A stretch of DNA of 64,000 nucleotides from the IMG/VR virus record IMGVR_UViG_3300024503_000015, positions 206,182 through 270,181 of that record; one strand, 5' to 3'. Positions within the stretch are counted from its first letter, which is position 1; every line of letters begins with the position of its first letter. Under the pieces are notes generated by a model that was given only the letters and a program-made list of their open reading frames with translations, was not told where the DNA came from and ran no database searches. This document shows positions 1,264-39,873 of the stretch, piece by piece. The translations under genes were made by a program, and so were the position numbers.

Positions 1264-1482
1264 ATGTTGTCATTATTAAAAAAACTATTTGGCGGTAAGT
1301 CTCAAGAAACCGTAGCAGAAGCACCATACAAGGTTGAAGCACCTAAAGTGGAAGAAACTAAAGTAGAAGCACCTGCTCCAGTTGCTGAGGCACCTAAAGC
1401 AGAAGCACCTAAGAAAAAGGCCGCTGGCCGTAAACCAGCAGCCGCAAAAAAGGCTCCTGCTAAGAAAGCCCCTAAGAAGTAA
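1264..1482 (+). CDS. Small Lys/Ala/Pro-rich basic protein (histone H1-like tail)
   Basis: TATAAATA at 1234-1241, then GGAGG, then ATG 1264; C-terminus KKAPAKKAPKK. Confidence 0.65.
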   Translation: MLSLLKKLFGGKSQETVAEAPYKVEAPKVEETKVEAPAPVAEAPKAEAPKKKAAGRKPAAAKKAPAKKAPKK

Positions 1483-2491
1483 TCGCTTGTTTGTGTAGTG
1501 CAAACGAGGCTAGATTTTTAGCCTTGCTTTCGCACATAATATCAAACTGATCCCAAAAACTCAGTGCCCATTCGTTCACTGCTGTGTTCCAGTAGAAGTT
1601 CGAATGTGCTCTGAGTTTTGCTTTTTTGTGTCCACTTTCCATTAGTGAAAGTAGGGAGGGAGCGGAGTCTGTGGCATGGCCATTAAGATGCTCTTCCCGT
1701 GAAACACTATAATGTATGACAGGGCGCACACCACGCCAACTATCGATAATCCTTTTAACACGGTCGTCAGTTGCTTCAATATATTCTCCAGTATTAATCC
1801 AATGATGGTGTATGTCTAGCACCAAAGCGAGATCTTTGGCAAGTTCGAGGCTTGAGTCGATTCCCCAGGTGATTTCGTCATTTTCGATGGTGATGCAGTT
1901 TCTTGCTTCGGGGGAAAGTCTCGGGAGGGCACTTTTAATACCGGCTGGACCGGCTCTACCGGCGATGTGGACGTTGATCTTAAAGTCCTGAAATCTTTTA
2001 CCATACCCCATCCATCTCGCCATATCCGCATGATACTCAAACTCCTCTATAGAACGCTGAACAATATCAGGATTGTCGCTTGCCAACACAGTAAATTGAC
2101 CAGGATGAAAACTGAGACGAACGTTGCGGGAACGAGCAATATCTCCCACTTCTGCAAAATGTTTTTGGGCGTATGTCTGCACATCATTTTCACGCCAAAA
2201 CCAGCACCAAGTAGGCTCAGTGTAGACAGGAAGAATATCACTGCTAAGGCGTACCATACGTAAGTCATCATCTAATTGCCCTACCCTTTCTACTAATAAT
2301 TTAGTTGAGTTGATATTTTGTTCAAGCAAAGACCACAATTTTTCAACAGCCACATCTTTGGTTTGACGGTTAAGCCAAGCCACAGTTGTTGCTCCTGTAT
2401 TGTATTTCTTACATTCATCTTTGGGTTTAATACCGTCTACTTGATCTGGACGGTCGATCCATTTACAGGCAAAGCCAATACGTTTGTTCAC
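1472..2491 (-). CDS. uvsE: UV damage endonuclease
   Basis: RIGFACK, RLSS, RLSFHPGQF, ENDE, LDIHHH and RAHS motifs. Likely GTG start at 2491 after GAGAG and a sigma70 promoter at 2520-2548. Confidence 0.92.
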   Translation of the reverse strand: MNKRIGFACKWIDRPDQVDGIKPKDECKKYNTGATTVAWLNRQTKDVAVEKLWSLLEQNINSTKLLVERVGQLDDDLRMVRLSSDILPVYTEPTWCWFWRENDVQTYAQKHFAEVGDIARSRNVRLSFHPGQFTVLASDNPDIVQRSIEEFEYHADMARWMGYGKRFQDFKINVHIAGRAGPAGIKSALPRLSPEARNCITIENDEITWGIDSSLELAKDLALVLDIHHHWINTGEYIEATDDRVKRIIDSWRGVRPVIHYSVSREEHLNGHATDSAPSLLSLMESGHKKAKLRAHSNFYWNTAVNEWALSFWDQFDIMCESKAKNLASFALHKQAITS

Positions 2492-2531
2492 AAAACTCTC
2501 GATAAAGTTACGATAATATATTATAGCATCG

Positions 2532-3227
2532 TTACTGCCAGTTGTCAACAATGATTTGGTCCTGGACATCTTCGGGATTTGGTGTTCCGTGGAACGCAAT
2601 TACGCTACAATCCGGGTTCATAGACGGGCTACGCACCGTCTTAAACACGTTTTTACCCTGAACCCTAATCAACTCTTCCCGCTGTCTTATTTCCCACTTG
2701 TAGCTCTGTATCCAAGTTTCAGGGAAAAATTTTATAATACTTTTGTGTGACTGCCAAATCCAATCTTGATCACCTGGGAACTTTTTGGTTAACGCTGGAT
2801 TGTTTTCCAAATCGTCCCAAATATTGCTGAAATGGTTACTGGGCCAACGCAGTACAGCACTACCTAATTTTGGTGGCACACGTCTAAACACTCTGCCTAC
2901 ATCTTCCAAACCAACAAAATTTCCAGGCAGGTACGAAACCAATTTGTCTATATTACCTACAATAACCATATCCAAATCAAAGAACAAATTTACATCACCG
3001 TCTGGAAAATGTCCTTGTTTAAAGATATATGGTTTCCACCACCAACCAGAAAACAGTCCTTTGGGCAAGGGTTTAATTTTAATTGCAGGATTTAAGTTTG
3101 TAGGATCTTCAGTAAAGCAATAAAAATCAAAAGGCACAGTTAAGTGCCTTGAGACCATATTGTAAAGTTTGTTTACATATTCCGGACCGTACTTTGTACC
3201 GTGTTTTAAACTAATGACGTTTAGCAT
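2532..3227 (-). CDS. Glycosyltransferase-like protein
   Basis: LKHGTKYGPEYV, GWWWK, FFDLD (DxD), GDQDW and FHGTPNP motifs typical of phage GT-A proteins. Confidence 0.7.
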   Translation of the reverse strand: MLNVISLKHGTKYGPEYVNKLYNMVSRHLTVPFDFYCFTEDPTNLNPAIKIKPLPKGLFSGWWWKPYIFKQGHFPDGDVNLFFDLDMVIVGNIDKLVSYLPGNFVGLEDVGRVFRRVPPKLGSAVLRWPSNHFSNIWDDLENNPALTKKFPGDQDWIWQSHKSIIKFFPETWIQSYKWEIRQREELIRVQGKNVFKTVRSPSMNPDCSVIAFHGTPNPEDVQDQIIVDNWQ

Positions 3228-3388
3228 TACCAGTGCCTTATTACACCCGCTACAATGAATATGTTAGTTATTATATAAGTCAATACAATAACAGTTCGAA
3301 TCAATGCAATCCTGTCCGCTTCTTGTTTGGTAACACCGGCTTTCTCTCCTAGTGCCTTGGCCCATAGTCTCCAAAACTTACGTACCAT
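3227..3388 (-). CDS. Small membrane protein (53 aa, not in ORF track)
   Basis: MVRKFWRLWAKALGEKAG...IFIVAGVIRHW; fills the gap and overlaps both neighbours. Confidence 0.75.
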   Translation of the reverse strand: MVRKFWRLWAKALGEKAGVTKQEADRIALIRTVIVLTYIITNIFIVAGVIRHW

Positions 3389-3935
3389 CTTTATAAAAAA
3401 CACTACGACTCTTAGGAGTTTCCCACCATTCGATGCTGTGAACTTTGACGCCTAATTTTTTCATTTTGACATCAACTAATTCTGCCATCCAACTACTTAG
3501 GTGTTCCGATGTTGGAACAAAGTCTACTACCATAAATCCTTCGTAGTATTCTTGTTCAGGACCAGACATATTAGCATAATAGATTGGATGAATATGCCAA
3601 CCTGCAACGTATTCGGTTTCTGGAACATACACTGGAATTAGCTCGACTTTTTCTCCCAGCATCTTAGTAAACAGCGGATCGTTTTTATCAATAATAAATT
3701 GATGATCAATATAAGTGTTGATCCATTTCTTTAGCCATTCTAAATGTCTAAAGTCAGTGACCATTCCAGTTTTATCTAATCCGTCGCCTGTTAAATGAAC
3801 CTGCATTTTACCTTCGTGTCCATGTAAATGTCTGCAAGCACATTTCAAGTCTGCCGCATATTCGCCGTTTAGTGTTTGTGTATGAACACGATGTCCATAA
3901 CAAAATTCAAATGTTTTATCAATGATCCAAGTCAT
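3378..3935 (-). CDS. queD: 6-carboxy-tetrahydropterin synthase (PTPS/QueD)
   Basis: F.YGHR, CRHLHGH, MVTDF, PTSE and WETP motifs. Confidence 0.9.
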   Translation of the reverse strand: MTWIIDKTFEFCYGHRVHTQTLNGEYAADLKCACRHLHGHEGKMQVHLTGDGLDKTGMVTDFRHLEWLKKWINTYIDHQFIIDKNDPLFTKMLGEKVELIPVYVPETEYVAGWHIHPIYYANMSGPEQEYYEGFMVVDFVPTSEHLSSWMAELVDVKMKKLGVKVHSIEWWETPKSRSVFYKDGT

Positions 3936-3966
3936 CTCTTGCCCTTTTTAAGTTAAGTTTGATGAC

Positions 3967-4005
3967 ACGCAGAGTATTTAAAGAGGGGTGAGCGTCTAGT
4001 CCTCT
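3967..4005 (-). promoter_or_regulatory. Candidate preQ1-I-like riboswitch / pseudoknot in queD leader
   Basis: AGAGG-ACUAGACGCUCACC-CCUCU-UUAAAUACUCU-GCGU: 5-bp stem, and loop ACGC can pair with the 3' GCGU. Starts just after a sigma70 promoter. Confidence 0.5.
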
Positions 4006-4013
4006 ATTGATAC

Positions 4014-4042
4014 AGTATATAGGTATTACATTATACTGTCAA
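4014..4042 (-). promoter_or_regulatory. sigma70-type promoter for queD
   Basis: TTGACA-N17-TATACT. Confidence 0.75.
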
Positions 4043-4601
4043 TAGTTTTGAATTTAACATTTGCCAAAAGCCAACTACTGGGCATCTGCCATTCTGTATT
4101 GTTAAAAACTACAAAGTACTTATCGGGGAAACATTCAAACACGCGAGCAATCTGGTATATCCAATACCTTGGATCCACTGCGGGTTTAGTAGCATCTGCA
4201 TAGTTAGCAGTATCTTTGTAAATGTTATTGACAAACTGTGTTGGGCTGTGTAGATCAAAACCAAATAAGTTTACATGGTCGTCTAGCATAGCGGCTAACA
4301 AAACAGCATACGGACCACTGCCCCATTGAAAAGGCTCGTCAGGTCTAGTAGTGCCCTGGTAAGGCAAGTCTGGTAATATTTTTACAGGATTGTTTTTGTA
4401 GAAGTGTGCCCAATCTTTTCTAGTATAGATTGTGCCAGCAAAGTGGCTATCCAGTGCTTCTTGTACCATACGTCTGTCTACACAGACTAAATGGTCGACT
4501 GAGTAGTCTCTATGTATGGCGTTACAGCCAACTTTAGTTTCTGTAAGTGAATTTAAATCTAAATGTTTTCTGGATTCGCCGTTGCCAAATACAGATATCA
4601 T
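4026..4601 (-). CDS. Hypothetical protein (Rossmann-like, GT29/Maf-like motifs)
   Basis: Likely start MISVFGNGESR (ATGA overlap); GCNAIHRD, GSGPYA and LFGFDL motifs. Confidence 0.6.
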   Translation of the reverse strand: MISVFGNGESRKHLDLNSLTETKVGCNAIHRDYSVDHLVCVDRRMVQEALDSHFAGTIYTRKDWAHFYKNNPVKILPDLPYQGTTRPDEPFQWGSGPYAVLLAAMLDDHVNLFGFDLHSPTQFVNNIYKDTANYADATKPAVDPRYWIYQIARVFECFPDKYFVVFNNTEWQMPSSWLLANVKFKTIDSIM

Positions 4602-6211
4602 CTTCCGCCAATATAACCGAACGGCTCCCAAGTACCAGGAGTACCGCTCATTACGCAGATCCATCCAACGTAACTAGTTCTTACTGGACTGCTATTCCAA
4701 ATGATATCGCCTTTGTTCCAGGCTTTTTCTGTAGGAGCACCTACGCCGTGTGCAAAGCGTTTACCATTGATAACCATCATTCCGTCTACGCTGAATGCCG
4801 CATCTTCTTGTGGGTTGGTAATGTTTACACTTAGTTGTCCATAGATGTTTACATTTCTAGTTGTATTATTTTTGTCACCGATACGGATACTGCCAGCGTT
4901 ATCTACTTCAAAGTCTTCGCCAATGCCAAACTTATCTGCTGTAATACCACTGCTGGATAATCTTAATGTGCCCGAGCCGTCTTTGATTGTTACAGAATTG
5001 TTAATTGTAACTACGCTGTCTTGTACAGTAATGCTGTCTGACAAGTTTACTGTTCCAGCAACATCTAATGATGTCAGTGTGCCTAAACGAGTAAGACTAG
5101 AGTTAACAACGCTAACTCCTAGGTCAGTTCTGTTTAATACACTCTTACCGTCGATCCAGAATTCTTTGTTAATTGCTAATTCAAGACTTTCTGAAGAATA
5201 GATTCTGTCAGGGTTTGGAAGCATAATAAACTGACGTGTACCACCTTCGCCCTTCCATTGCATACCCTTGCCAAAAATACTGTTATCCTTACTGGCTATA
5301 AATTCTATTGGACTAGTTTTTTCGATTCTGATGTCAGATACAATGCTGTCTACTTCTAATCTGCCGTGAACTTTGACTATTGCGCCTTTGCTCTTAGCAT
5401 TGCCAAACTCTGTAGTGTTTCCTGATACTGTAATACGTCTTGTGTTATCGGTAACAATACTGAAACTGTTACTGCCCCAAGTACCTACAAAACCCACTGA
5501 GTCTTGATCCGCACCTAAAATTACTTCTACATTATTGTCAACGGCACTGATAACTGCGTTTGGTTCTTCTGTATTGACACCTAGTCTTCCTAGGGCATTA
5601 ACAAAAACTGTGTCACCTAGGTTTGTTTCGCCTGTAACACGTAGTTCTTCTAAAGGACCCACTGTGCGTAGGTTACTGTCACGTACTGAATTACCTAATC
5701 TTGTGCGCTCTAAAACATCTGTGCCTTCAATTTGATACTTAGAACCTTTGTATAAATCAATAGATTCTGTGCTGAAAATTCTTTTTGGGTTTGCTTTAAA
5801 AACAAACTGATAACTTACATCTGGGCTGTCCCATTGCAAGCCTTTACCATCTAAATCGCTGAGTTGTCTGCTGGCAAAAGAAATGGATTTTGTAAATGAT
5901 TCTAGGCTTTGTTCTGAAATAACATTCTTAACTAACAGCGTATCTGCTTCTAATTTGCCGTTAACTTTTAAGTTAGCAAATTCGCTAGTACCTGCGGCAA
6001 CAATTTTTCCAGCGCCAAGAACGCCTTCTACGTGAATGTTTCCGCTAATTCTGTCAGCACTTAATACGCCAACCTGTACACCTTTATCTGTAACAATCAT
6101 CTGCTCACGTGTAGCAGTATCAGAAATGCCCTTAGATAGTGTGCCACCGTTAGCGGCTGATTTTAGTGCGTCACCTAAATCTTGAAGAATTTTGTCGATG
6201 TTTGAGCTCAT
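4598..6211 (-). CDS. Virion structural / tail-associated protein
   Basis: Start MSSNIDK 7 nt after TATAAATA (6219-6226). Internal repeat (GKGxQW...PxRIxSxESxxL...SxLxxxGxL); C-terminal W.KGDIIWN..P...GWIC..SGTPGTW. Confidence 0.7.
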   Translation of the reverse strand: MSSNIDKILQDLGDALKSAANGGTLSKGISDTATREQMIVTDKGVQVGVLSADRISGNIHVEGVLGAGKIVAAGTSEFANLKVNGKLEADTLLVKNVISEQSLESFTKSISFASRQLSDLDGKGLQWDSPDVSYQFVFKANPKRIFSTESIDLYKGSKYQIEGTDVLERTRLGNSVRDSNLRTVGPLEELRVTGETNLGDTVFVNALGRLGVNTEEPNAVISAVDNNVEVILGADQDSVGFVGTWGSNSFSIVTDNTRRITVSGNTTEFGNAKSKGAIVKVHGRLEVDSIVSDIRIEKTSPIEFIASKDNSIFGKGMQWKGEGGTRQFIMLPNPDRIYSSESLELAINKEFWIDGKSVLNRTDLGVSVVNSSLTRLGTLTSLDVAGTVNLSDSITVQDSVVTINNSVTIKDGSGTLRLSSSGITADKFGIGEDFEVDNAGSIRIGDKNNTTRNVNIYGQLSVNITNPQEDAAFSVDGMMVINGKRFAHGVGAPTEKAWNKGDIIWNSSPVRTSYVGWICVMSGTPGTWEPFGYIGGR

Positions 6212-8218: not shown

Positions 8219-10300
8219 ATGCCATTATTAACTACATTAGGTAGCGCAGGCGTACAATCATATGGAACTTCTGGAATACAGCCGGGAGGAAGTTTGTACT
8301 TTGTTGGCGGCAGTCAGTACTTAACATTTTCGGGAACTAGTTTAACCTACGGTACGGCAAACTTTACCATAGAGTTTTGGTGGAAACCAATTACTAATTT
8401 GACTGGTATTAAAGTTTTATATGCTCAATGGTTTGGTAACAATAATTATCTTTGGATTTATCAACGTGATGGCCAAATTGTATTTGCCACAGTAGGCGGC
8501 GCCATTCGAGCATTTGGTGGAACATTGACATTAAACACTTGGAATCATATTGCTTTAGTTCGAAACAGTGGTAGTGCTAGATTGTTCGTAAACGGTGTAG
8601 CCTATGCTTCTGCAACCTGTACTAATAACTATGCTACTAATACAACATATAATCCGTGTGTGGGGCAATGGTATCCGGGCAATAGTACTTACCCAGCATT
8701 GGGTTACTTAACCAATTTAAGAATTTCTAAGAGTGCGTTATACACTACAGGATTTACTCCTAGCAAAGTTCCTTTTACTAGAACAAGTCAGGGTGCAACC
8801 GCATCTCTATTATTAAATGTAAAATCTAGTGGAACATTTACTACTGATAGTTCAGCCAATGCGATAGCAGTGACAAACAATCTTGTAACATATATTGCTG
8901 AATCTCCATATACTGAAAATTATGTAACGCCGCCAACAGTAACAGTAGTATCTGCTACAGTAACTCCATCTACTCTTACAGGCAGCGAGGGTAGTGCAAT
9001 TACGTTTACTATTGCTGGAACAAACGTTACAGATGGAACATACTACTATACAATTGAACAAGCATCCGGTAGTACAGCAATTACTACATCTGATTTTACC
9101 TCTGCATCCTTGTCTGGTACATTTACAATGACCAGCAATAGCGGATCATTTAATATAACACCTGCAAAGGATTTATTTACAGAAGGTACCGAAACGTTTT
9201 CTGTTGCAGTAAGACAAACATCGATTACAGGAACAATTATTGGCGCCAGTGATGAAATAACTATAACAGATATTTCTATTACACCAACATTAACACCTGA
9301 CGCGGCAACTGTAAACGAAGGAAGTAGTGTATCGTTCACCGCAGCCAATGTTGGCCCAGACGGAACATACTACTGGACAACATCTGGTATTAGTGCAGGC
9401 GATGTAACTGCTACTAGCGGCTCATTTACAATAAGCGGTAGTACTGGTGGAATAGAAAACGGCACGGGCACATTTAGCATCACTACGTCTTCGGATAGAA
9501 CAACCGAAGGATCTGAAACTATGAACGTACAAGTTCGAAGTGGCAGTACTAGCGGAACTATTATTGTATCAACTAGTGTAACGATACTTGATACCTCATT
9601 GACACCATTTACTTCATTTACTGCCAATAGTACTATTGCAGAAATGGCAGGCAACATATCCGGGTATGCTACATCGACTACATTACAAGTAGGAAACCTT
9701 GGGCCTGCTGGAACATATTATTATACATTTAATAACGTATCTGGAACACTATTGACCACAGATATTTCTACAGGAAGTCTATCAGGATCTTTCACAACAA
9801 CTTCATTAAATCAAACAACTACATTAACTATCGGTGCGGCCTCTGATACTGTAGCAGAAACTAATAGTGTCCAAGTGTTTACAGTTCAAATTAGAGAAGG
9901 TTCTATATCAGGAACAGTATTAGTAACTAGTGGACAGATAATATTATACGATTCATCGATGACAATTTCTGCAGTTTCTCCGAACCCTGCTAGTGAAGGT
10001 AACGGATTAAACATTACAGTAACTACACCATTATCGTCTCCTAACGGAATGGTTCAAGGAACATATTGGTTAACATTTGAAAGCACCAGCTCTGCTGTAG
10101 CCGCAGACGTTAGCGGACTACCGTATTCGTTTAATATTACCAGCCAAGGAAACTATTTTATTAACGGTATAGTTTCTATTCGTGCCACGGACGGAGCAGA
10201 AGCCGCAGAAACATTTAGAATTGGTGTGAGACAAGGGTCCACTACCGGAACCCTTGTTGGACTAAGTCCTGTGATTACAATTAACGCTAGTGCTACTTAA
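8219..10300 (+). CDS. Virion protein with LamG/ConA-like domain and Calx-beta/Ig-like repeats
   Basis: NFTIEFWW, WNHIALVR, GYLTNLRIS; repeated D..TEG.ETF.V..R.GS.TG units. Confidence 0.75.
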   Translation: MPLLTTLGSAGVQSYGTSGIQPGGSLYFVGGSQYLTFSGTSLTYGTANFTIEFWWKPITNLTGIKVLYAQWFGNNNYLWIYQRDGQIVFATVGGAIRAFGGTLTLNTWNHIALVRNSGSARLFVNGVAYASATCTNNYATNTTYNPCVGQWYPGNSTYPALGYLTNLRISKSALYTTGFTPSKVPFTRTSQGATASLLLNVKSSGTFTTDSSANAIAVTNNLVTYIAESPYTENYVTPPTVTVVSATVTPSTLTGSEGSAITFTIAGTNVTDGTYYYTIEQASGSTAITTSDFTSASLSGTFTMTSNSGSFNITPAKDLFTEGTETFSVAVRQTSITGTIIGASDEITITDISITPTLTPDAATVNEGSSVSFTAANVGPDGTYYWTTSGISAGDVTATSGSFTISGSTGGIENGTGTFSITTSSDRTTEGSETMNVQVRSGSTSGTIIVSTSVTILDTSLTPFTSFTANSTIAEMAGNISGYATSTTLQVGNLGPAGTYYYTFNNVSGTLLTTDISTGSLSGSFTTTSLNQTTTLTIGAASDTVAETNSVQVFTVQIREGSISGTVLVTSGQIILYDSSMTISAVSPNPASEGNGLNITVTTPLSSPNGMVQGTYWLTFESTSSAVAADVSGLPYSFNITSQGNYFINGIVSIRATDGAEAAETFRIGVRQGSTTGTLVGLSPVITINASAT

Positions 10301-33541: not shown

Positions 33542-33616
33542 TGGTCCCGCTACTACGAATCGAACGTAGACTTACTCTTTAGGAGAGAGTCGTTCTATCC
33601 ATTGAACTATAGCGAG
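33542..33616 (-). tRNA. tRNA-Arg(CCT)
   Basis: Cloverleaf; ACTCT-CT CCT AA-AGAGT; CCA. Confidence 0.9.
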
Positions 33617-33626
33617 GGAGGGAATT

Positions 33627-33734
33627 TGGTGTGACCGGGAGGGTTCGAACCTCCAAGGACGGCATATCGCCTAGTCCCGACCCACGGAGTGTTTCACAAC
33701 AGTCCTGGAGCTCTGCCTATTCGCTCACGGTCAC
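33627..33734 (-). ncRNA. tRNA-like RNA with a multi-hairpin domain replacing the anticodon loop
   Basis: Acceptor GTGACCG/CGGTCAC-ACCA, D and T arms; AGGAC/GTCCT stem encloses about 41 nt; own promoter at 33741-33769. Confidence 0.7.
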
Positions 33735-33765
33735 ATACTAAGTATATAACCTTTTCAGCAGTTTG

Positions 33766-34206
33766 TCAACGGGTTATGAGGTATTCGTAGTTCACTGTGT
33801 TGTCGTTTTCTTGCAACACACAGGCACCATTTCTGATATGGAACTTGTAGGCCATTTCAGTTTTTGGGCTAAGTGTTACAAAACGATTAACAGTTGGGAA
33901 AAGTTCTTTTATTTGATCCACTACACCAAAAAGTAGCTCTGCGGCCGCACCCGGCGCATAACTCCAAATTGTATAGAAGATTGCTGTAGTTGGTTCTGTG
34001 GGTGTTTTAGCCAAATCTTCAACAGTTGTTGGCACAAAATCGTGCAGACTAACACAGACCATTGCACGTGGTTTTTCGCCTTCTACAGTGGTGGCGACAA
34101 ATCTGCTACCGCTAACACGAAATTCTTTGGGAATTTCTGGACGTACTGGATCATCCTTGATATAGTCAAGTAATGGATTAGTAGTTTCTCTGATTAATGT
34201 TAGCAT
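33766..34206 (-). CDS. Hypothetical protein (GNAT-like C-terminus)
   Basis: DDPVRP, FYTIWSY, VTLSP, FH..NGA; ATG 5 nt after TAAATA. Confidence 0.7.
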   Translation of the reverse strand: MLTLIRETTNPLLDYIKDDPVRPEIPKEFRVSGSRFVATTVEGEKPRAMVCVSLHDFVPTTVEDLAKTPTEPTTAIFYTIWSYAPGAAAELLFGVVDQIKELFPTVNRFVTLSPKTEMAYKFHIRNGACVLQENDNTVNYEYLITR

Positions 34207-34244
34207 ATAACTATTTAGCATTTAGTGGGCAGATTATGGTGTTA

Positions 34245-34319
34245 TGGTGGTAACGGTGAGATTCGAACTCACACCTTGCTCCGTATGAAGGAGGTGCACG
34301 ACCATTATGCTACGTTACC
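34245..34319 (-). tRNA. tRNA-CAT (Met or Ile2)
   Basis: CTCC-TT CAT AC-GGAG; CCA. Confidence 0.85.
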
Positions 34320-34322
34320 AGA

Positions 34323-34558
34323 TTATTAGTAAGATGTCCCGAGAGTTTTGGTTTGGGTAAGGCCATCCGACGGTGCGATTCGTCCCTCTCTTTGTCTAGC
34401 CCAACATGAAGTTCTTGTAGTCTCAATCCGCTCACCTTGCACCGGCGCTTGATACATATACTCTACAGCATTAAAGTTTATAACTTCAATTAACAAAAAC
34501 TTCCGATCTTTGTTAACTCCTTGCGGATGCTTTTAGAACCTTAACTACTTACTAATAA
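34323..34558 (-). ncRNA. Stem-enclosed structured RNA
   Basis: 11-bp terminal IR TTATTAGTAAG/CTTACTAATAA; internal hairpins. Confidence 0.5.
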
Positions 34559-34560
34559 AA

Positions 34561-34829
34561 GGGGTGGAGAGAGAAAGGCAAGTAATAGACTGGACAATGT
34601 ACAAGCGGGCTCTATAAAGATACCCTTAACAAGTCACAAGGCGCAAAGCACAGGGACCTGTATATTTCCAGTTAGCAACTCACAAAGTCGATTAATATAT
34701 AGAACTGGTTCACACAAGCACGAAACGTTTTCAAGACGTTTTGCCAGTAGTTGATGTTCGGTCTCTATAAGAGATCAAACCTTAGGCATGTAGCCTAAGT
34801 CTGTCTATCCTAATCTCCTTCTCTACTCC
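34561..34829 (-). ncRNA. Stem-enclosed RNA with repeated YUUGU motifs
   Basis: Terminal GGAGTAGAGA.../...TCTCCACCCC stem; about 8 (C/U/A)UUG(U/C) repeats. Confidence 0.5.
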
Positions 34830-34858
34830 AGGCTCGGGCTTTCGCCTTTGCCAAAACT

Positions 34859-34932
34859 TGGTTGCGGGACCTGGAATCGAACCAGGATCTAGAGCTTATG
34901 AGACTCTTGAGTTACCGTTTCTCTATCCCGCG
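34859..34932 (-). tRNA. tRNA-Met(CAT), initiator-like
   Basis: C1:A72 mismatch (CGCGGG...CCCGCAACCA), but lacks the three G-C anticodon-stem pairs. Confidence 0.85.
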
Positions 34933-34935
34933 ATA

Positions 34936-35072
34936 ACTTTATAGGTGCTCTCTGTTCGACTCGAACGAAACCTGCTGAGCTCCTTATCTTCCTGGCACTT
35001 TCGGTGGGTAGTCGACTTAGCACCTAACTCGTGTTATCCAGTGTAGTTCAGCTCAGAGAGCATTTATAAAGT
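34936..35072 (-). ncRNA. Long-stem RNA with T-loop-like hairpin
   Basis: About 19-bp terminal stem ACTTTATAAATGCTCTCTG/CAGAGAGCACCTATAAAGT; GTTCGAGTC loop. Confidence 0.55.
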
Positions 35073-35268
35073 GTCTAGCCACTCCCACCACAGGAGCCCT
35101 AAACCGAGCTGTTACTCTGTCCACTAGCCTTTCCATTTAGACGGTGCTGAGGTCCGCCTTTGTGATTTCTCAAGTCGCTTTAAACAAGCCTTGCGGTAGA
35201 TCCAATGCACCGAGCCATTAAGGTGTAGCAATTACCTAACTCTATCACGCTGAGTTAACGCGGGGTCT
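35073..35268 (-). ncRNA. Putative structured RNA
   Basis: Non-coding and GC-richer than the genome; several hairpins including CCGCAAGG. Confidence 0.45.
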
Positions 35269-35269
35269 G

Positions 35270-35842
35270 TTACAGTAAACCTTCTGCTTGCAGAACTGCT
35301 TCTGTTTTGTCAGACAATTGGATAGTTGTCTGAACATTTAACTCTAGGATTTCATCCTGAAGTTTTTGTTTCTGCTTTTTAGCAGTTGCCACTCTACGAC
35401 GGAATCCGTCTAGATCTTCACGAGTGAGCACACTAGTGTCTACTGTGTCGTTGTAGCCATAGATGCTACGACGGTTTTCGCTTTTGTCGTTACGGATCTT
35501 GTCCAAACGACCTGCTACAACCTTTGCGCTTTCGCGAACGGTCTTACTAGCCAATCCGTTGTAGAATTGGATTTGTTTTTCTAGATGTGCAACATCGGCC
35601 AATCTAGTGTCGATTCTAACTTCTGTGTTAGCACCGCTGACACTTTTACGAATCTCGTAAAGTGCTTCCACTAACGCATCTCTGCGTGTAAGGTTGTCGC
35701 AGAGTGTTCCTGCAACTTTGGAAATTTCTTGTTCCGCTTCTTGGAACTCGTTGATTTTTACTGTGGTCTCAAACTGGAAACCTTTGACGGTATCGTTGAT
35801 ACTGTTCTGAAGTGCATTTGCCTTACGTAGGGAGATATTCAT
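35270..35842 (-). CDS. Coiled-coil hypothetical protein
   Basis: Start MNISLRKANAL after AAGGA; helical. Confidence 0.75.
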   Translation of the reverse strand: MNISLRKANALQNSINDTVKGFQFETTVKINEFQEAEQEISKVAGTLCDNLTRRDALVEALYEIRKSVSGANTEVRIDTRLADVAHLEKQIQFYNGLASKTVRESAKVVAGRLDKIRNDKSENRRSIYGYNDTVDTSVLTREDLDGFRRRVATAKKQKQKLQDEILELNVQTTIQLSDKTEAVLQAEGLL

Positions 35843-35908
35843 TTGTTTTTCCTTTAATGTTTCTATTATACAATCTTTTAAATCTAAATCAATGCCTTTT
35901 GGCAAAAC

Positions 35909-35984
35909 TGGAGCGGGAGACGAGGTTCGAACTCGCGACATTTACCTTGGCAAGGTAATGCTCTACCAACTGAGCTACTCCCGC
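35909..35984 (-). tRNA. tRNA-Gly(GCC)
   Basis: Canonical cloverleaf; CCA. Confidence 0.95.
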
Positions 35985-36032
35985 ATATGAAGAACCTAAG
36001 GCAAAGTTTATAACTTATCCAAAGGCCATATA

Positions 36033-36108
36033 TGGTACACGGTACGGGAATCGAACCCGTCTTACTGACGTGAAAGGCCAGTGTCCTAAACCGATAGACG
36101 AACCGTGC
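36033..36108 (-). tRNA. tRNA-Glu(TTC)
   Basis: Canonical cloverleaf; CCA. Confidence 0.95.
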
Positions 36109-36114
36109 ATTACT

Positions 36115-36190
36115 TGGCTCCCCAGGGTGGGATCGAACCACCGACACCCTGATTAACAGTCAGGTGCTACTACCGCTGAGCTACTAGGGA
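36115..36190 (-). tRNA. tRNA-Asn(GTT)
   Basis: Canonical cloverleaf; CCA. Confidence 0.95.
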
Positions 36191-36197
36191 ATAAACT

Positions 36198-36272
36198 TGG
36201 TACCTGGTGACAGTTTCGAACTGCCGACCCTCTCGGTGTAAACGAGACGCTCTACCACTGAGCTAACCAGGC
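36198..36272 (-). tRNA. tRNA-Val(TAC)
   Basis: Canonical cloverleaf; CCA. Confidence 0.95.
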
Positions 36273-36282
36273 AAACTAACAT

Positions 36283-36359
<77 letters not shown>

Positions 36360-36364
36360 AATGA

Positions 36365-36440
36365 TGGAGCGGGAGGCGAGAGTTGAACTCGTCTATTTCA
36401 GTTTGGAAGACTGACGTGTAACCACAAACACTTCACCCGC
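36365..36440 (-). tRNA. tRNA-Gly(TCC)
   Basis: TCAGT-CT TCC AA-ACTGA; CCA. Confidence 0.9.
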
Positions 36441-36446
36441 ATATTT

Positions 36447-36530
36447 TGGTGCCCCAGGAGAGACTCGAACTCTCACGGCTCTCGCCACTGGCTTCTAAGA
36501 CCAGCGTGTCTACCATTCCACCACCAGGGC
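36447..36530 (-). tRNA. tRNA-Leu(TAG)
   Basis: Long variable arm; CCA. Confidence 0.95.
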
Positions 36531-36531
36531 A

Positions 36532-37335
36532 TTAACTGACAATACTATTTAAGTATTCCTGAATTGTCGTTGCAATTTTTTCTTGCACAGACAATTTAAT
36601 TTTTGCATTCTCACCATTAGCACTCATATACTGTTTTCCGTATTCAGTACAATCTATACCAGTGTGCATAAACTCTTTAAAAATTTCTGAGTTGTCAGGA
36701 TTAGGATCTCCAAACCTAACAGTCGTCCATTTAATATTTTGAGAATCTAAAAACTTAATTAACATATTGTAACCATTTCTATGTCTACGAATATGCCAAT
36801 CTTTGCTTTGACTTTTTTGAAAAGCAATACCGTTTAATCGCTTTTTATGAACTTCAATTGGATATCTATCTGGATTCCATTCTCCGTCTACATAATTTTC
36901 ACGTTCAAATACATATCGTTGATTGTTATATTTGAAACTGTGTGCTATATGACTAAACGTGTAATCTGTAACTAATACATGATCCGGTTTAGGATTCTCT
37001 GCTAGGTACTGTTTTAATCTTTTGTGATGACCTATAAAATGTCCACCGTTAATAGATATATTAACTACATTGGAAACATTTAAGAAATTAGGCCATGCGG
37101 CTTTTTGTTCTTCTTCCCATAGATAATGCCAAACAACATTTTCCATATTGCCATTGGGCATAGGTGTTGTAACATTGTTTTCTTTTCTATGTTTTAGATA
37201 CCATTTAAAAACACTTCTAAAATCATTATGGAAACGTAGACTCCAAGTCCTCGGAGCATCGTCGTTGACTATGTCACCAGCCAAACAATTATTGCCATTA
37301 CTTTGGCAATCTCCTAAAATTAAAAGTGTTTTCAT
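36532..37335 (-). CDS. Hypothetical protein (SGNH-like start) inside the tRNA array
   Basis: LLILGDCQS, NISINGG; AT-rich 267-aa ORF. Confidence 0.7.
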   Translation of the reverse strand: MKTLLILGDCQSNGNNCLAGDIVNDDAPRTWSLRFHNDFRSVFKWYLKHRKENNVTTPMPNGNMENVVWHYLWEEEQKAAWPNFLNVSNVVNISINGGHFIGHHKRLKQYLAENPKPDHVLVTDYTFSHIAHSFKYNNQRYVFERENYVDGEWNPDRYPIEVHKKRLNGIAFQKSQSKDWHIRRHRNGYNMLIKFLDSQNIKWTTVRFGDPNPDNSEIFKEFMHTGIDCTEYGKQYMSANGENAKIKLSVQEKIATTIQEYLNSIVS

Positions 37336-37349
37336 ATTAATAGTTATCT

Positions 37350-37426
37350 TGGCGCACCGTAGGGGACTTGAACCCCTGGCCTCCGACGTGACAGGCCGGC
37401 GCTCTGACCAACTGAGCTAACGGTGC
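37350..37426 (-). tRNA. tRNA-Asp(GTC)
   Basis: Canonical cloverleaf; CCA. Confidence 0.95.
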
Positions 37427-37431
37427 AAATT

Positions 37432-37511
37432 CTATTCTGAAACACACTAACCAACTACCAGAAGCATTTATAATGCCGTTATTCGGTTCGAGCTAATGTG
37501 TTTTAGAATAG
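37432..37511 (-). ncRNA. Stem-enclosed small RNA
   Basis: CTATTCTAAAACACATTAGC/GTTAGTGTGTTTCAGAATAG terminal stem. Confidence 0.5.
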
Positions 37512-38391
37512 TGCTAACGCTGAGATTATACGTTAGCCAATAGTGCCTCTAGCATTATAGTCAGCCTTGCGAGCCAACCTTCTCTAGACATCCACATAAG
37601 CCATTACTGTACCTATGTCCACTATCAGCATCGCCGTTTTTAAAGACAGGCAGTAGTCTTGTCGCCATATGCTATTCTACGCTATCTACTCCGTTGACCT
37701 TGCGAGCCATTCAGCGGCGCTAACCACTTACGAAACTTCCAGCATAAACAGATTTCACCTTGCGAGCTACGTCTGACTCGATTACCTTGCGGCTCGAGTA
37801 TTAGATGCTTTTCACATATGACCGAGGCAGTCTTTGCATTTTATAATCGATAGTTGGGATCGAACCAACAGTCCATTGCTTAAGAGGCAATTGCGTTACC
37901 ATTACGCTATATCAAACCTACCGCGATGAGCTGCCTCTGTTGCTCAATAACCTTTTGGATTACTGAATACAACTCACCACATACCTTTTGTCTCGCGGAC
38001 TACTCAGTGATATTTCACGATCAATGTCCTGCATCAAAACAGTCCACTAACCATTAATATTGCATACAAGCCCTTAGGAGCGACCCCTTGGACAAATACA
38101 CTACCCTTTCTCATACCAATTCGCAAGTTGGTTTTGTTAGGAAGTCAGCACCACCCGTTACTTTTCATGCACCCTGGTTCCCTTGCGGGCCAGTCGATAC
38201 ACATTCTTTCCCTAACACTTGCTTCATTGTTACATCCACCGGTCTTCTCAGTGAACGCTACCTCGCGGTAGTGAGCAGGCTTGTTTACATGAACCATTAC
38301 TGGCGGAGTTGCGTAGGCTTACCTCCTTTGGGTTGATCACTCAACTTATTCTTCGTCAACGGCGAACCGCCAACAGGATAATAAACTACCC
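37512..38391 (-). ncRNA. GOLLD-like giant ncRNA (~880 nt)
   Basis: No credible ORF; five CGCAAG tetraloop hairpins; lies in a tRNA cluster; nested tRNA; 3' hairpin GCTAACG-TATAATCTCAG-CGTTAGC. Confidence 0.7.
37845..37916 (-). tRNA. tRNA-Lys(CTT) nested in the GOLLD-like RNA, no CCA
   Basis: ATTGC-CT CTT AA-GCAAT; intact D and T arms. Confidence 0.75.
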
Positions 38392-38401
38392 TTAAATTTT
38401 T

Positions 38402-38570
38402 ACCATTAAAAAATAACATTACACCCTATGGGATGAAACGTATTTCTGAGTGGAGTTCGATTCTCCTCATAAGCCATTGTTCACGGTTTTCTCAGAAGGG
38501 TAAGATGGCCTTATCCTTCATAAGTCTATGCGTCCATAGACGATACCCGTCAATGCTATTTCTTAATGGT
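38402..38570 (-). ncRNA. Stem-enclosed structured RNA
   Basis: ACCATTAAGAAATAGCATT/AATGTTATTTTTTAATGGT; the stem begins with the tRNA-Tyr ACCA. Confidence 0.5.
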
Positions 38571-38652
38571 GGATGCGGCTGGAGTCGAACCAGCAGTGCC
38601 GTAAGGCGGCGGATTTACAGTCCACTGGGGTTACCAATTTTCCTACACATCC
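38567..38652 (-). tRNA. tRNA-Tyr(GTA)
   Basis: Long variable arm; CCA. Confidence 0.9.
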
Positions 38653-38703
38653 ATATCTGCTTGAAATTTTTAAAGAACTAGGTTAATTTCTTAACTAGTC
38701 TCT

Positions 38704-38732
38704 ATTGTATATGAACTTTAGAAACTAGTCAA
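38704..38732 (-). promoter_or_regulatory. Internal sigma70 promoter in the tRNA array
   Basis: TTGACT-N17-TACAAT. Confidence 0.65.
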
Positions 38733-38739
38733 GACATTT

Positions 38740-38834
38740 TGGCAGTGAGTAAGGGATTCGAACCCTTGATCCCCGTTTTTGCAGGAATGCCTTCTTAGCA
38801 GGAAGGTGCCTTCGACCAGCTCGGCCAACTCACT
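38740..38834 (-). tRNA. tRNA-Ser(GCT)
   Basis: Long variable arm; GCCA. Confidence 0.9.
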
Positions 38835-38842
38835 ATATTTGT

Positions 38843-38871
38843 ATTATACGATCAACTGTTAAACAAGTCAA
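38843..38871 (-). promoter_or_regulatory. Internal sigma70 promoter in the tRNA array
   Basis: TTGACT-N17-TATAAT. Confidence 0.75.
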
Positions 38872-38878
38872 CACCTTT

Positions 38879-38968
38879 TGGCCGAAGCGGTGAGATTCGA
38901 ACTCACGGACCCTTTCGGATCGTCTGTTTTCAAGACAGGTGCAATAAACCGGACTCTGCCACGCTTCG
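38879..38968 (-). tRNA. tRNA-Ser(TGA)
   Basis: Long variable arm; GCCA. Confidence 0.95.
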
Positions 38969-39014
38969 TTGTTTTACTTGTATAATTCGTTGTAGATAGA
39001 ATCTGCTACAAATG

Positions 39015-39092
39015 TGGTACCCCTGCTCCGATTCGAACGGAGAGAACTTCTCCTTTTGAGAGAGACGACTTTACCAATTTGTCCACAGGGGT
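39015..39092 (-). tRNA. tRNA-Leu(CAA), short variable arm
   Basis: TCTCT-CT CAA AA-GGAGA. Confidence 0.85.
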
Positions 39093-39097
39093 ATATC

Positions 39098-39171
39098 TGG
39101 TGCTCAAGGAAAGAATCGAACTTTCGATTGTGTCGTACCAAGACACTGGTATACCATTTACCTACAAGAGC
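39098..39171 (-). tRNA. tRNA-Thr(GGT)
   Basis: GTGTC-TT GGT AC-GACAC; two U:U mismatches in the acceptor stem. Confidence 0.85.
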
Positions 39172-39173
39172 CT

Positions 39174-39245
39174 TGGCGCCTCTGAGTAGATTCGAACTAC
39201 TATAACCTGGTTTAGAAGACCTGGCACTGCTCCATCAGCAGAGGC
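39174..39245 (-). tRNA. tRNA-Arg(TCT), reduced D arm
   Basis: Loop CT TCT AA; 72 nt; GCCA. Confidence 0.7.
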
Positions 39246-39246
39246 A

Positions 39247-39323
39247 TGGTACCCTTGGTTGGATTCGAACCTACACACAACGGATTTTAAATCCATTCGC
39301 ATTACCAATTAGCGTACAAGGGC
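39247..39323 (-). tRNA. tRNA-Leu(TAA), short variable arm
   Basis: ATGGA-TT TAA AA-TCCGT. Confidence 0.85.
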
Positions 39324-39330
39324 ATAATTA

Positions 39331-39406
39331 TGGTGCCGCCCCTTGGGATCGAACCAAGTTCCTCGGTGCTTCAAACCGGTGCAATGACCACATTTGCTAA
39401 AGCGGC
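39331..39406 (-). tRNA. tRNA-Phe(GAA)
   Basis: CGGT-TT GAA GC-ACCG. Confidence 0.9.
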
Positions 39407-39412
39407 GATATT

Positions 39413-39487
39413 TGGGGTGAAGCCGGGAATCGAACCCTGCCTTACTGTTTCACAGACAGCCGTGCGGACCACTACACTAGCAACACC
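39413..39487 (-). tRNA. tRNA-His(GTG)
   Basis: G-1:C73; anticodon GTG. Confidence 0.85.
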
Positions 39488-39489
39488 AT

Positions 39490-39566
39490 TGGCCGGCCCT
39501 GAGAGACTCGAACTCCCAACCTCCAGTTTCGAAGACTGGCACTCTAATCCATTGAGTTAAGGACCG
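39490..39566 (-). tRNA. tRNA-Arg(TCG)
   Basis: CCAGT-CT TCG AA-ACTGG; A20. Confidence 0.9.
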
Positions 39567-39573
39567 TTAAAAT

Positions 39574-39647: not shown

Positions 39648-39657
39648 ACAGATTGAA

Positions 39658-39870: not shown

Positions 39871-39873
39871 ACT

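What the first reader, a model, noticed from the sequence alone, without database searches (positions are those of the whole stretch)
3967..4005. preQ1-I-like riboswitch pseudoknot in the phage queD leader
The transcript starts just upstream of a 5-bp stem AGAGG/CCUCU. The loop ends CUCACC, an A-rich tail UUAAAUA follows, and GCGU can pair with loop ACGC to form an H-type pseudoknot. This resembles class I preQ1 aptamers as I recall them. The downstream gene makes a preQ0/preQ1 precursor, so the gene context fits. The longer loop suggests a variant, possibly with a different deazaguanine or pterin ligand. Riboswitches are seldom reported in lytic phages. Caveat: the tail also contains the late-promoter motif TAAATA.
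Basis: partly seen in the sequence, partly recalled or inferred. Interest (0 to 1): 0.7.

Follow-up and report, generated by a model that had tools for sequence, protein, structure and literature searches.

The report
Phage-only pseudoknot switch before queD

Summary
The single sequence folds no better than shuffles. The evidence comes from relatives: 260 fetched viral loci carry the element, as 155 distinct aptamers. P1 covaries. A pseudoknot helix P2 is supported by compensatory changes at all five pairs.

The element sits at the 5' end of the mRNA. In about 96% of cases the next gene is a PTPS/QueD homologue. No Rfam 15 family matches it; the preQ1-I model scores under 9 bits here against a threshold of 39. 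It does share preQ1-I's overall plan: a 5-bp P1 closed by G-C, an invariant C before the P1 3' strand, and an A-rich L3.

The P2 3' strand overlaps the 5' strand of a second helix. That helix buries the start codon in this window, and the Shine-Dalgarno sequence in a second class. Pseudoknot formation should therefore free the ribosome site, which is ON logic, the opposite of known preQ1 switches.

The ligand is unknown. I found the motif in no cultured phage, in none of the 80 bacterial pattern matches checked, and in no paper searched. Verdict: a real, probably new riboswitch-like class, and only loosely preQ1-I-like.

The parts
4037..4042 (-). -35 hexamer TTGACA of a sigma-70-type early promoter
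   Evidence: 11 of 12 consensus matches with a 17-nt spacer. It belongs to about 30 such promoters on this strand of the genome.
4014..4019 (-). -10 hexamer TATACT. The predicted transcript start is near 4007-4010, 2-5 nt before P1.
   Evidence: In 30 of 75 relatives a good -10 lies 3-11 nt before P1; many others have an ATAAATA-type motif there instead. The start site is predicted, not measured.
4001..4005 (-). P1 5' strand AGAGG
   Evidence: Pairs with 3982-3986. 97.7% of cells are paired and three positions show compensatory changes. The closing G-C pair is invariant in 70 of 70 sequences.
3997..4000 (-). L1 (ACUA). The family pattern is N-C-U followed by 0-6 variable nucleotides.
   Evidence: L1 length is 3-9 nt. 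C and U at positions 2-3 are invariant in alignments A3 and A4, and the later filters required them, so their constancy beyond A4 is not an independent finding. The first L1 nucleotide varies: U 64, A 48, C 43.
3992..3996 (-). P2 5' strand GACGC, inside the P1 loop
   Evidence: Pairs with 3964-3968. 100% paired in 69 distinct close relatives. 87.4% paired, with all five pairs covarying, in 125 distinct relatives.
3987..3991 (-). L2 UCACC (family UCAYC). The invariant C at 3987 directly precedes the P1 3' strand.
   Evidence: UCAUC 123, UCACC 29, UCAAC 3. U, C, A and the final C are invariant in A6, but the filter that chose its rows required them. This C is positionally equivalent to the preQ1-I specificity cytosine as described in PMC11625349; that equivalence is an inference.
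3982..3986 (-). P1 3' strand CCUCU
3969..3981 (-). L3 UUAAAUACUCUGC, 13 nt. The family pattern is N N A N A N A Y U C U G C.
   Evidence: Three alternating A's and UCUGC are invariant in the close-relative alignment A2, whose rows were chosen by a looser pattern. In the wider A6 the selecting filter itself required them. Fixed length of 13 nt. TAAATA is present in only 32 of 155 variants.
3964..3968 (-). P2 3' strand GUGUC
   Evidence: Relatives carry CUGUC, AAGUC, AGGUC, UGCC, CGCC, CACC, GCAU, ACUA and others, each matching its own loop strand.
3961..3966 (-). Sequestor 5' strand GUCAUC. It shares GUC with the P2 3' strand.
   Evidence: It pairs with GAUGAC at the start codon in the MFE fold. 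The CAU:AUG helix has probability above 0.5 in 51 of 74 leaders.
3942..3946 (-). Shine-Dalgarno-like AAGGG, in the loop of the sequestor hairpin
   Evidence: Sequence reading. It lies 6 nt before the AUG.
3931..3936 (-). Sequestor 3' strand G-AUG-AC (start codon at 3935-3933)
   Evidence: The G-AUG-R-C context occurs in 64 of 66 genes behind the element, against 11 of 420 (2.6%) other genes in the same loci.
3378..3935 (-). Regulated gene: a 185-aa PTPS/QueD-family protein
   Evidence: PF01242 E 2.4e-27. phrog_2389 QueD-like. TIGR03367 QueD 59.8 bits, below its cut-off of 89. 41-43% identical to QueD of Campylobacter and Pseudomonas jumbo phages.

Best explanation
The element is a 5'-terminal cis-regulatory RNA of the phage PTPS/QueD mRNA. 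It can adopt two mutually exclusive folds.

Fold A is a compact H-type pseudoknot. P1 is AGAGG:CCUCU and P2 is GACGC:GUGUC. Three highly conserved loops surround them: L1 N-C-U..., L2 UCAYC, and L3 NNANANAYUCUGC.

Fold B is a hairpin in which GUCAUC pairs with G-AUG-AC and buries the start codon. In a second class of relatives, an anti-SD strand pairs with the Shine-Dalgarno sequence instead.

The 3' strand of P2 and the 5' strand of the sequestor share nucleotides, so forming the pseudoknot releases the ribosome-binding site. I think a small ligand most likely stabilises fold A. By analogy with preQ1-I it would be a flat guanine-like heterocycle such as a 7-deazapurine, a pterin or a purine, read by the invariant C before the P1 3' strand. 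The element would then be a translational ON riboswitch for the first committed enzyme of the phage's 7-deazapurine pathway.

Shown: the conservation, both helices, the gene association, the overlap of strands, and the absence of a match to any Rfam family. Inferred: ligand binding, the ON direction, and the transcript start.
For: 1. Family size and specificity. A QueD-based search and two DNA-pattern scans of IMG/VR returned 260 loci with the element, in 155 distinct versions. My covariance model separates true copies (40-77 bits) from pattern-only hits (22 bits or less). It finds exactly one copy in this 270-kb genome, at 63.2 bits, E 4e-18.

2. Structure. P1 is 97.7% paired with three covarying pairs. 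P2 is 100% paired in close relatives. Across 125 distinct sequences P2 is 87.4% paired against 53.6% in shuffles, with five of five pairs changed on both sides, 233 such cells, and 0 of 500 shuffles as high. Slid registers reach 50% at most. G-U pairs fit only the minus-strand RNA.

3. Gene association. The first downstream gene is a PTPS family member in 74 of 77 and 111 of 115 cases, spanning at least six subfamilies. The loops stay constant while the protein diverges strongly in sequence. That fits a constant small ligand better than a co-evolving protein partner.

4. Expression platform. The G-AUG-R-C context needed for the sequestor helix is found in 64 of 66 regulated genes, against 2.6% of neighbouring genes. 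Blocking the P2 strands raises P(AUG unpaired) from 0.05 to 0.45 in the start-codon class (n = 96), and P(SD unpaired) from 0.30 to 0.63 in the SD class (n = 86). Both designs point the same way.

5. Pathway context. This genome also encodes FolE and a QueE-like radical-SAM enzyme. Relatives place QueE-like, YhhQ/Vut_1, phosphoribosyltransferase and GMP-reductase genes behind the element.
Against: - No ligand was tested, and no direct transcript 5' end is available. The metatranscriptome data are assembled contigs that break at the conserved core.
- The single sequence folds no better than shuffles.
- ON control of a biosynthetic gene by its own pathway product would be odd, so either the ligand is not the end product or the direction is misread.
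- In part of the SD class, an alternative pairing with GCAUG at the start could offset the opening of the SD: mean P(AUG unpaired) goes from 0.47 to 0.39.
- The thermodynamic model ignores the pseudoknot's own energy and folding kinetics.
- Many sequences are related, so counts of cells are not counts of independent events.
- The rows were collected with sequence patterns and a filter that demanded parts of L1, L2 and L3 and 4 of 5 P1 pairs. Invariance of those loop letters in the wider set, and any P1 statistics there, are partly built in. P2 was not selected for.
Confidence: 0.6

Rival explanations
1. It is a true, if divergent, preQ1-I riboswitch. It binds preQ1 or preQ0 and represses queD by feedback.
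For: It has the same overall plan, as listed for preQ1-I in PMC11625349: an H-type pseudoknot, a 5-bp P1 closed by an invariant G-C, an invariant C before the P1 3' strand preceded mostly by U (as in type I), and an A-rich start to L3. The gene regulated belongs to the queuosine-precursor pathway. RF00522's best hit in one relative's 30-kb contig falls exactly on the element (11.6 bits).
Against: RF00522 gives under 9.1 bits here and 11.6 bits (E 0.23) at best, against a gathering score of 39. No Rfam family appears at E up to 10 even in a 66-nt search. The nucleotide after P1 is not a conserved U. L3 is 13 nt long and carries an invariant UCUGC that preQ1-I lacks. P2 is a 4-5-bp G+C-rich helix. 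The P2 3' strand overlaps an anti-start or anti-SD strand rather than the SD, which predicts ON rather than OFF.
Confidence: 0.13
2. The pseudoknot is the operator for a protein. Candidates are the PTPS/QueD enzyme itself (autogenous control, as with the T4 gene 32 leader pseudoknot), another phage translational regulator, or ribosomal protein S1.
For: Phage leaders with pseudoknots that bind their own gene product are known (T4 gene 32; from my own knowledge). The strict link to one gene family would suit autoregulation. Conserved single-stranded loops could be protein contacts.
Against: The RNA loops are nearly invariant across at least six PTPS subfamilies that differ strongly in sequence and length (141-306 aa). 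There is no co-variation of the RNA with the protein subfamily. PTPS is a T-fold enzyme with no known RNA-binding role. The complex prediction could not be run for protein plus RNA, so there is no evidence either way from that.
Confidence: 0.14
3. It is a ligand-independent structure. It could be a 5'-end cap-like pseudoknot that protects the mRNA from 5'-dependent decay. It could also be a folding timer or thermosensor that sets a fixed ratio of open to closed ribosome sites.
For: It sits at the extreme 5' end of the predicted transcript. Two-state competition does not by itself require a ligand.
Against: A stabiliser or timer would be expected on many phage mRNAs. This genome has one copy, and the family is tied to one enzyme family in about 96% of cases. 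Fifteen or more invariant unpaired nucleotides are hard to explain without a specific partner.
Confidence: 0.1
4. It is a chance stem next to, or overlapping, a late promoter (TAAATA), with no RNA function.
For: (A/C)TAAATA is strongly enriched upstream of genes in this phage. The single-sequence fold is unremarkable.
Against: Compensatory covariation in two helices across 125-155 distinct sequences. TAAATA is absent from L3 in 123 of 155 variants; what is kept is A-N-A-N-A. The conservation is strand-specific, through G-U pairs.
Confidence: 0.02

Closest known systems
preQ1-I riboswitch (Rfam RF00522), especially type I
   Same: A small H-type pseudoknot at an mRNA 5' end. A 5-bp P1 closed by G-C. 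A loop strand that pairs with the 3' tail. An L2 of about 5 nt ending in an invariant C directly before the P1 3' strand, mostly preceded by U. An A-rich L3 start. Association with a queuosine-precursor pathway gene. Translational control.
   Different: No significant covariance-model match (under 9-12 bits against 39). L1 is longer and begins N-C-U rather than U. L3 is 13 nt with an invariant UCUGC. P2 is 4-5 G+C-rich pairs. The P2 3' strand overlaps an anti-start or anti-SD strand, so ON is predicted rather than OFF. Known only from phage contigs. The ligand is untested.
preQ1-II and preQ1-III riboswitches (RF01054, RF02680)
   Same: Pseudoknotted sensors tied to the queuosine-precursor pathway. 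In preQ1-III the expression platform lies away from the binding pocket.
   Different: They are much larger (about 80-100 nt), have an HL-out topology with extra helices, and are associated with the queT transporter gene. No model match here.
THF-II (folE motif) and THF-I riboswitches
   Same: Small RNAs that control an early gene of GTP-derived pterin metabolism and recognise a guanine-like (pterin) face.
   Different: THF-II is a hairpin with an internal loop and no pseudoknot. It is bacterial and acts as an OFF switch. No model match here.
Leader pseudoknot of phage T4 gene 32 mRNA
   Same: An H-type pseudoknot at the 5' end of a phage mRNA that governs translation of the downstream gene.
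   Different: It nucleates binding of the gene's own protein product and has no conserved ligand-pocket-like loops. The comparison rests on my own knowledge and was not tested here.

Membership tests
preQ1-I riboswitch (RF00522) | Match to the family covariance model at or above the gathering score (39 bits) | tested here: not met
   No Rfam hit at E up to 10 in 351-nt and 66-nt searches. A whole-genome scan with RF00522 lists seven hits of 9.1-13.8 bits, none on the element. The best relative scores 11.6 bits, E 0.23.
preQ1-I riboswitch (RF00522) | H-type pseudoknot: a 5-bp P1, with part of the P1 loop pairing to the 3' tail (P2) | tested here: met
   P1 is 97.7% paired with three covarying pairs. 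P2 is 87.4% paired with five covarying pairs in 125 sequences, and 0 of 500 shuffles reach that.
preQ1-I riboswitch (RF00522) | Invariant specificity cytosine immediately 5' of the P1 3' strand, preceded by U (type I) or A (types II and III); G-C closing pair on top of P1 | tested here: met
   C is invariant, preceded by U in 123, C in 29 and A in 3 of 155 aptamers (the collecting patterns required this C, so its invariance there is partly built in). The closing G-C is present in 70 of 70. The feature definition is taken from PMC11625349.
preQ1-I riboswitch (RF00522) | Conserved U directly after the P1 5' strand (U6) that reads the ligand edge | tested here: not met
   That position is U 64, A 48, C 43. 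The next two nucleotides, C-U, are the constant ones instead (invariant in A3 and A4; required by the later filters).
preQ1-I riboswitch (RF00522) | Short A-rich L3 (about 6-8 nt) leading straight into the P2 3' strand | tested here: not met
   L3 is a fixed 13 nt, N N A N A N A Y U C U G C. Only the first half is A-rich, and UCUGC has no counterpart in preQ1-I.
preQ1-I riboswitch (RF00522) | In translational members, the P2 3' strand includes SD nucleotides, so ligand binding turns expression OFF | tested here: not met
   The P2 3' strand overlaps the strand that pairs with the start codon (this window) or with the SD (second class). Blocking P2 opens the ribosome site.
preQ1-I riboswitch (RF00522) | Selective binding of preQ1 | not testable with these tools
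   Needs in-line probing, ITC or reporter assays.
Riboswitch (generic) | A conserved structured aptamer with covariation, in the 5' UTR, with a consistent gene association and an expression platform that overlaps the aptamer | tested here: met
Riboswitch (generic) | Direct ligand binding that changes expression without a protein | not testable with these tools
   No biochemical data. The ligand is unknown.

The most novel reading that the evidence does not exclude
This is a new riboswitch class known only from viruses. It would be a preQ1-I-like pseudoknot that has been rewired into a translational ON switch. It would sense a purine-, pterin- or 7-deazapurine-like metabolite other than the pathway end product, for example the substrate-side pterin or guanine. 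It would gate the first committed enzyme of a phage 7-deazapurine pathway. In near-complete relatives that pathway lacks both a recognisable QueC and a TGT/DpdA, so it may work at the nucleotide level, as in toyocamycin synthesis.
Probability: 0.4. Interest if true: 0.88.

Novelty: new variant of a known kind. Interest (0 to 1): 0.8.

Why it matters
Riboswitches are rarely reported in lytic phages, and I know of no class confined to viruses. This one is compact (about 45 nt) and abundant in environmental jumbo-phage contigs. It is backed by unusually rich covariation and is tied to a single enzyme family. That makes it a ready target for ligand hunting and for structural work alongside the well-studied preQ1-I fold.

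If the ON logic holds, it shows how the same small pseudoknot plan can be inverted, by letting the tail carry an anti-sequestor instead of the SD.

It also points to an uncharacterised phage 7-deazapurine pathway. That pathway has FolE, PTPS and a QueE-like enzyme, often a phosphoribosyltransferase or GMP reductase, and no QueC or TGT. Its product and purpose (DNA, tRNA or nucleotide pool) are unknown.

Tried and rejected
- Rfam scans of the whole window, of 351 nt and of 66 nt around the element gave nothing relevant.
- RF00522 run directly on this genome and on five relatives' contigs gave only sub-threshold noise, with one hit on a relative's element at 11.6 bits.
- The single-sequence fold is not significant.
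- A megablast of the region against cultured phages found no match.
- A blastn of the leader against 50,697 phage records gave only chance hits inside coding genes.
- The queD leaders of PA5oct, CP220 and Vibrio phage 2.275.O lack the element even with the model's filters off.
- A pattern scan of bacterial genomes gave 120 or more matches, about the number I estimate by chance. All 80 fetched score 22 bits or less with the model.
- MAFFT alignments of variable-length segments pushed the gaps to the ends and were unusable for P1. I solved this with an equal-length seed alignment, a covariance model and a model-based alignment.
- The model-based alignment of the wider family truncated before P2. 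I replaced it with an ungapped 33-nt alignment.
- Metatranscriptome contigs from the same river samples contain the region but break at the conserved core, and they give no 5' ends.
- A protein-RNA complex prediction for the autoregulation rival was not folded by the tool, so it is not evidence either way.
- Seven literature searches on preQ1 riboswitches, queD or PTPS, and phage found no description of the motif.
- Readings considered and rejected: a terminator of the upstream gene (it lies downstream of the promoter and has no U-tract), a transcription attenuator (only 14-35 nt to the AUG and no terminator), and a DNA-level operator (G-U pairs and compensatory changes argue for RNA).

Full report
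**What is at the coordinates**

The feature lies on the minus strand. Reading 5'->3' from 4007, the sequence is AU AGAGG ACUA GACGC UCACC CCUCU UUAAAUACUCUGC GUGUC AUC. It continues AAACUUAACUUAAAAAGGGCAAGAG AUG ACU.

- AGAGG (4005-4001) pairs with CCUCU (3986-3982).
- The loop ends CUCACC, and UUAAAUA follows the stem.
- GCGU (3970-3967) is complementary to ACGC (3995-3992).

The ORF 3935..3378 encodes a 185-aa PTPS/QueD-family protein:
- PF01242, E 2.4e-27.
- PHROG QueD-like.
- NCBIfam QueD 59.8 bits, below its cut-off.
- 41-43% identical to QueD of Campylobacter and Pseudomonas jumbo phages.

A near-consensus sigma-70 promoter, TTGACA-17-TATACT at 4042..4014, precedes the stem. It is one of about 30 such promoters on this strand of the genome. 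The window is the last 64 kb of a 270,181-bp viral contig that CheckV rates 71% complete.

**Is it more than chance?**

Not from this sequence alone. The leader's MFE is -14.1 kcal/mol, z = -0.92. No Rfam 15 family matches at E up to 10, in 351 nt or in 66 nt. The preQ1-I model RF00522, run on the whole genome, lists seven hits of 9.1-13.8 bits, none on the element.

**Relatives change the picture**

A search of IMG/VR with the QueD protein gave 80 loci at 67-100% identity. About 35 of them have the same leader, with the stem changed in a compensatory way: AGUGG/CCACU, UGCGG/CCGCA, AGACG/CGUCU.

These hits lie upstream of genes with quite different N-termini.

I built a covariance model from 32 equal-length copies, using P1 only.
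- True copies score 40-77 bits and pattern-only hits 22 bits or less.
- The model finds a single copy in this genome: 63.2 bits, E 4e-18.

**Structure**

On the model-based alignment of 70 distinct sequences:
- P1 is 97.7% paired.
- Three of its pairs change on both sides. The middle pair is U-A in 27, A-U in 26 and C-G in 17 sequences.
- P2 between GACGC and GUGUC is 100% paired.
- The whole structure is 98.8% paired; 0 of 500 shuffles reach that, and slid registers reach at most 68%.

A second pattern left the P2 3' strand free and excluded the main class. It uncovered many more variants. Their P2 strands are entirely different yet complementary:

| Loop strand | Tail strand |
|---|---|
| GACUU | AAGUC |
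| GGCG | CGCC |
| GGCA | UGCC |
| GGUG | CACC |
| AUGC | GCAU |
| UAGU | ACUA |
| GACAG | CUGUC |

There are 53 strand combinations in all.

On an ungapped alignment of 125 distinct 33-mers, my register gives:
- 87.4% of cells paired, against 53.6% in shuffles.
- All five pairs changed on both sides, in 233 cells.
- A covariation score of 0.867 against 0.279.
- 0 of 500 shuffles as high, and slid registers at 50% or less.

Its '+2' slide, which is my register, gives 90%.

G-U pairs fit only this strand, so the functional molecule is the minus-strand RNA.

One caveat applies. The rows were collected with patterns and a filter that demanded parts of L1, L2 and L3 and at least 4 of 5 P1 pairs. 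Loop invariance in the wider set is therefore partly built in. P2 complementarity was not selected for.

**Anatomy of the family** (155 distinct aptamers in 260 loci)

- P1: 5 bp with an invariant G-C on top.
- L1: 3-9 nt beginning N-C-U.
- P2: 4-5 bp.
- L2: UCAUC, UCACC or UCAAC, with an invariant last C.
- L3: always 13 nt, N N A N A N A Y U C U G C.

TAAATA occurs in L3 in only 32 of 155. What is kept is the alternating A pattern. In this genome (A/C)TAAATA really is a gene-upstream motif, 22-fold enriched. But the internal copy here is TTAAATA and is not conserved as such, so the late-promoter reading does not explain the element.

Upstream of P1, 30 of 75 relatives have a good -10 hexamer at 3-11 nt. 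Many others have an ATAAATA-type motif about 8-12 nt away. The aptamer therefore seems to start at the 5' end of the transcript whichever promoter type is used. This is a prediction. The river metatranscriptome data are assembled contigs that break at the conserved core and give no 5' ends.

**What it controls**

The first downstream gene is a PTPS-family protein in 74 of 77 cases and in 111 of 115 cases. These span at least six subfamilies of 141-306 aa. The exceptions are a cupin, a methyltransferase and two unknowns.

Genes further downstream include UvdE, a glycosyltransferase-like protein, a phosphoribosyltransferase, a QueE-like radical-SAM enzyme, a Vut_1/YhhQ-family transporter, GMP reductase and KdsA.

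Elsewhere in this genome there is a cluster containing:
- FolE.
- A QueE-like enzyme, 70% identical to the one linked to the element in relatives.
- A 2OG-Fe(II) oxygenase.
- An XPRT-like phosphoribosyltransferase.

No TGT/DpdA and no convincing QueC were found here. Nor were they found in two near-complete relatives (382 kb at 100% and 332 kb at 93%), though all have the QueE-like gene. Divergent DpdA families could escape PF01702.

**Expression platform and direction**

In the window class, GUCAUC (3966-3961) pairs with G-AUG-AC (3936-3931). GUCAUC is the last three bases of the P2 3' strand plus AUC.
- The G-AUG-R-C context that this needs is present in 64 of 66 regulated genes, but in only 11 of 420 other genes of the same loci.
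- The helix has probability above 0.5 in 51 of 74 leaders.

In a second large class, the P2 3' strand (for example UGCC) runs into CCUAUG...CAUAGG. This hairpin buries the AGG of the SD AGGAG and shares CC with P2.

I mimicked the pseudoknot by blocking both P2 strands:

| Class | n | Measure | Free fold | P2 strands blocked |
|---|---|---|---|---|
| Start-codon sequestor | 96 | P(AUG unpaired) | 0.05 | 0.45 |
| SD sequestor | 86 | P(SD unpaired) | 0.30 | 0.63 |

The paired test gives p = 1e-22. Blocking the neighbouring UCUGC instead has less effect.

Both platform designs make P2 and the sequestor mutually exclusive. Pseudoknot formation should therefore open the ribosome site, which is ON. 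This is a thermodynamic inference. In part of the SD class an alternative pairing with GCAUG partly offsets it.

**Comparison with known families**

The features that define preQ1-I were taken from the review PMC11625349.

Met:
- H-type pseudoknot.
- A 5-bp P1 with a G-C closing pair.
- An invariant C before the P1 3' strand, preceded mostly by U as in type I.
- A pathway-appropriate gene.

Not met:
- The covariance-model score.
- A conserved U after P1.
- A short A-rich L3.
- SD nucleotides within P2.

RF00522 does place its best hit in one relative's contig on the element, but at 11.6 bits and E 0.23.

I therefore do not file it as a preQ1-I member. It works like a small pseudoknot riboswitch and may be a distant, rewired offshoot of preQ1-I.

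**Distribution and novelty**

- No cultured phage in 50,697 records carries it.
- The closest cultured QueD genes (PA5oct, CP220, Vibrio 2.275.O) lack it.
- Seven literature searches found no description.

Within these limits it appears undescribed.

**Verdict**

It is a real, conserved, phage-borne cis-regulatory pseudoknot. It is most likely a translational ON riboswitch for PTPS/QueD with an unknown ligand that is probably guanine-, pterin- or 7-deazapurine-like.

The P2 register, the family membership and the implied OFF logic are not supported.

Noticed in passing
window 37517-37980 (-): A full-length GOLLD RNA (RF02032, 207 bits, E 4e-57) with a tRNA-Lys(CTT) embedded at 37844-37917. It lies inside the phage's tRNA array.
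   Followed up: no
window 52086-52549 (-): A phage-encoded permuted (two-piece) tmRNA. It matches RF04321 at 138 bits and the beta-proteobacterial type at 129 bits. ARAGORN gives the tag peptide ANASTFEYFTVEGFTADNGLVAA. This may hint at a betaproteobacterial host.
   Followed up: partly
window 33542-46395 (-): An array of 32 tRNA genes. It includes all four GUN-anticodon tRNAs that receive queuosine (Asn, Asp, His, Tyr). At 46322-46395 there is a tRNA with anticodon CTA, a possible amber suppressor and so possible TAG recoding.
   Followed up: partly
G000:C1:147000-160000 (locus L337), outside the window: A cluster with FolE (L337 7047-7745), a QueE-like radical-SAM enzyme (5197-6060), a 2OG-Fe(II) oxygenase (4513-5196) and an XPRT-like phosphoribosyltransferase (8742-9323). 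Near-complete relatives lack TGT/DpdA and QueC. Together this suggests a 7-deazapurine route that stops at, or branches from, CDG and may act on nucleotides, as in toyocamycin synthesis.
   Followed up: partly
whole genome G000; e.g. upstream regions of 17 of 157 genes: The heptamer ATAAATA (also CTAAATA) is about 22-fold enriched in the 90 nt upstream of genes. It is probably this phage's late or middle promoter motif. Many relatives place it 8-12 nt before P1 of the pseudoknot.
   Followed up: partly
window 3227-3403 (-) and equivalents in 23 related loci: A small conserved ORF (53-58 aa, phrog_1679, function unknown) directly follows the PTPS gene in many phages. It is probably co-transcribed and therefore under the same control.
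   Followed up: no
window 3954-3997: In four river metatranscriptome assemblies, contigs break exactly at the conserved pseudoknot core. The loose ends match other phages' versions of the element. So several variants co-occur in one sample, and the core acts as an assembly repeat.
   Followed up: partly
window 1472-2599 (-) and related loci: A UvdE-type UV-damage endonuclease gene (PF03851, E 3.6e-41) lies two to four genes downstream of PTPS in 30 related loci. This linkage is conserved and unexplained.
   Followed up: no
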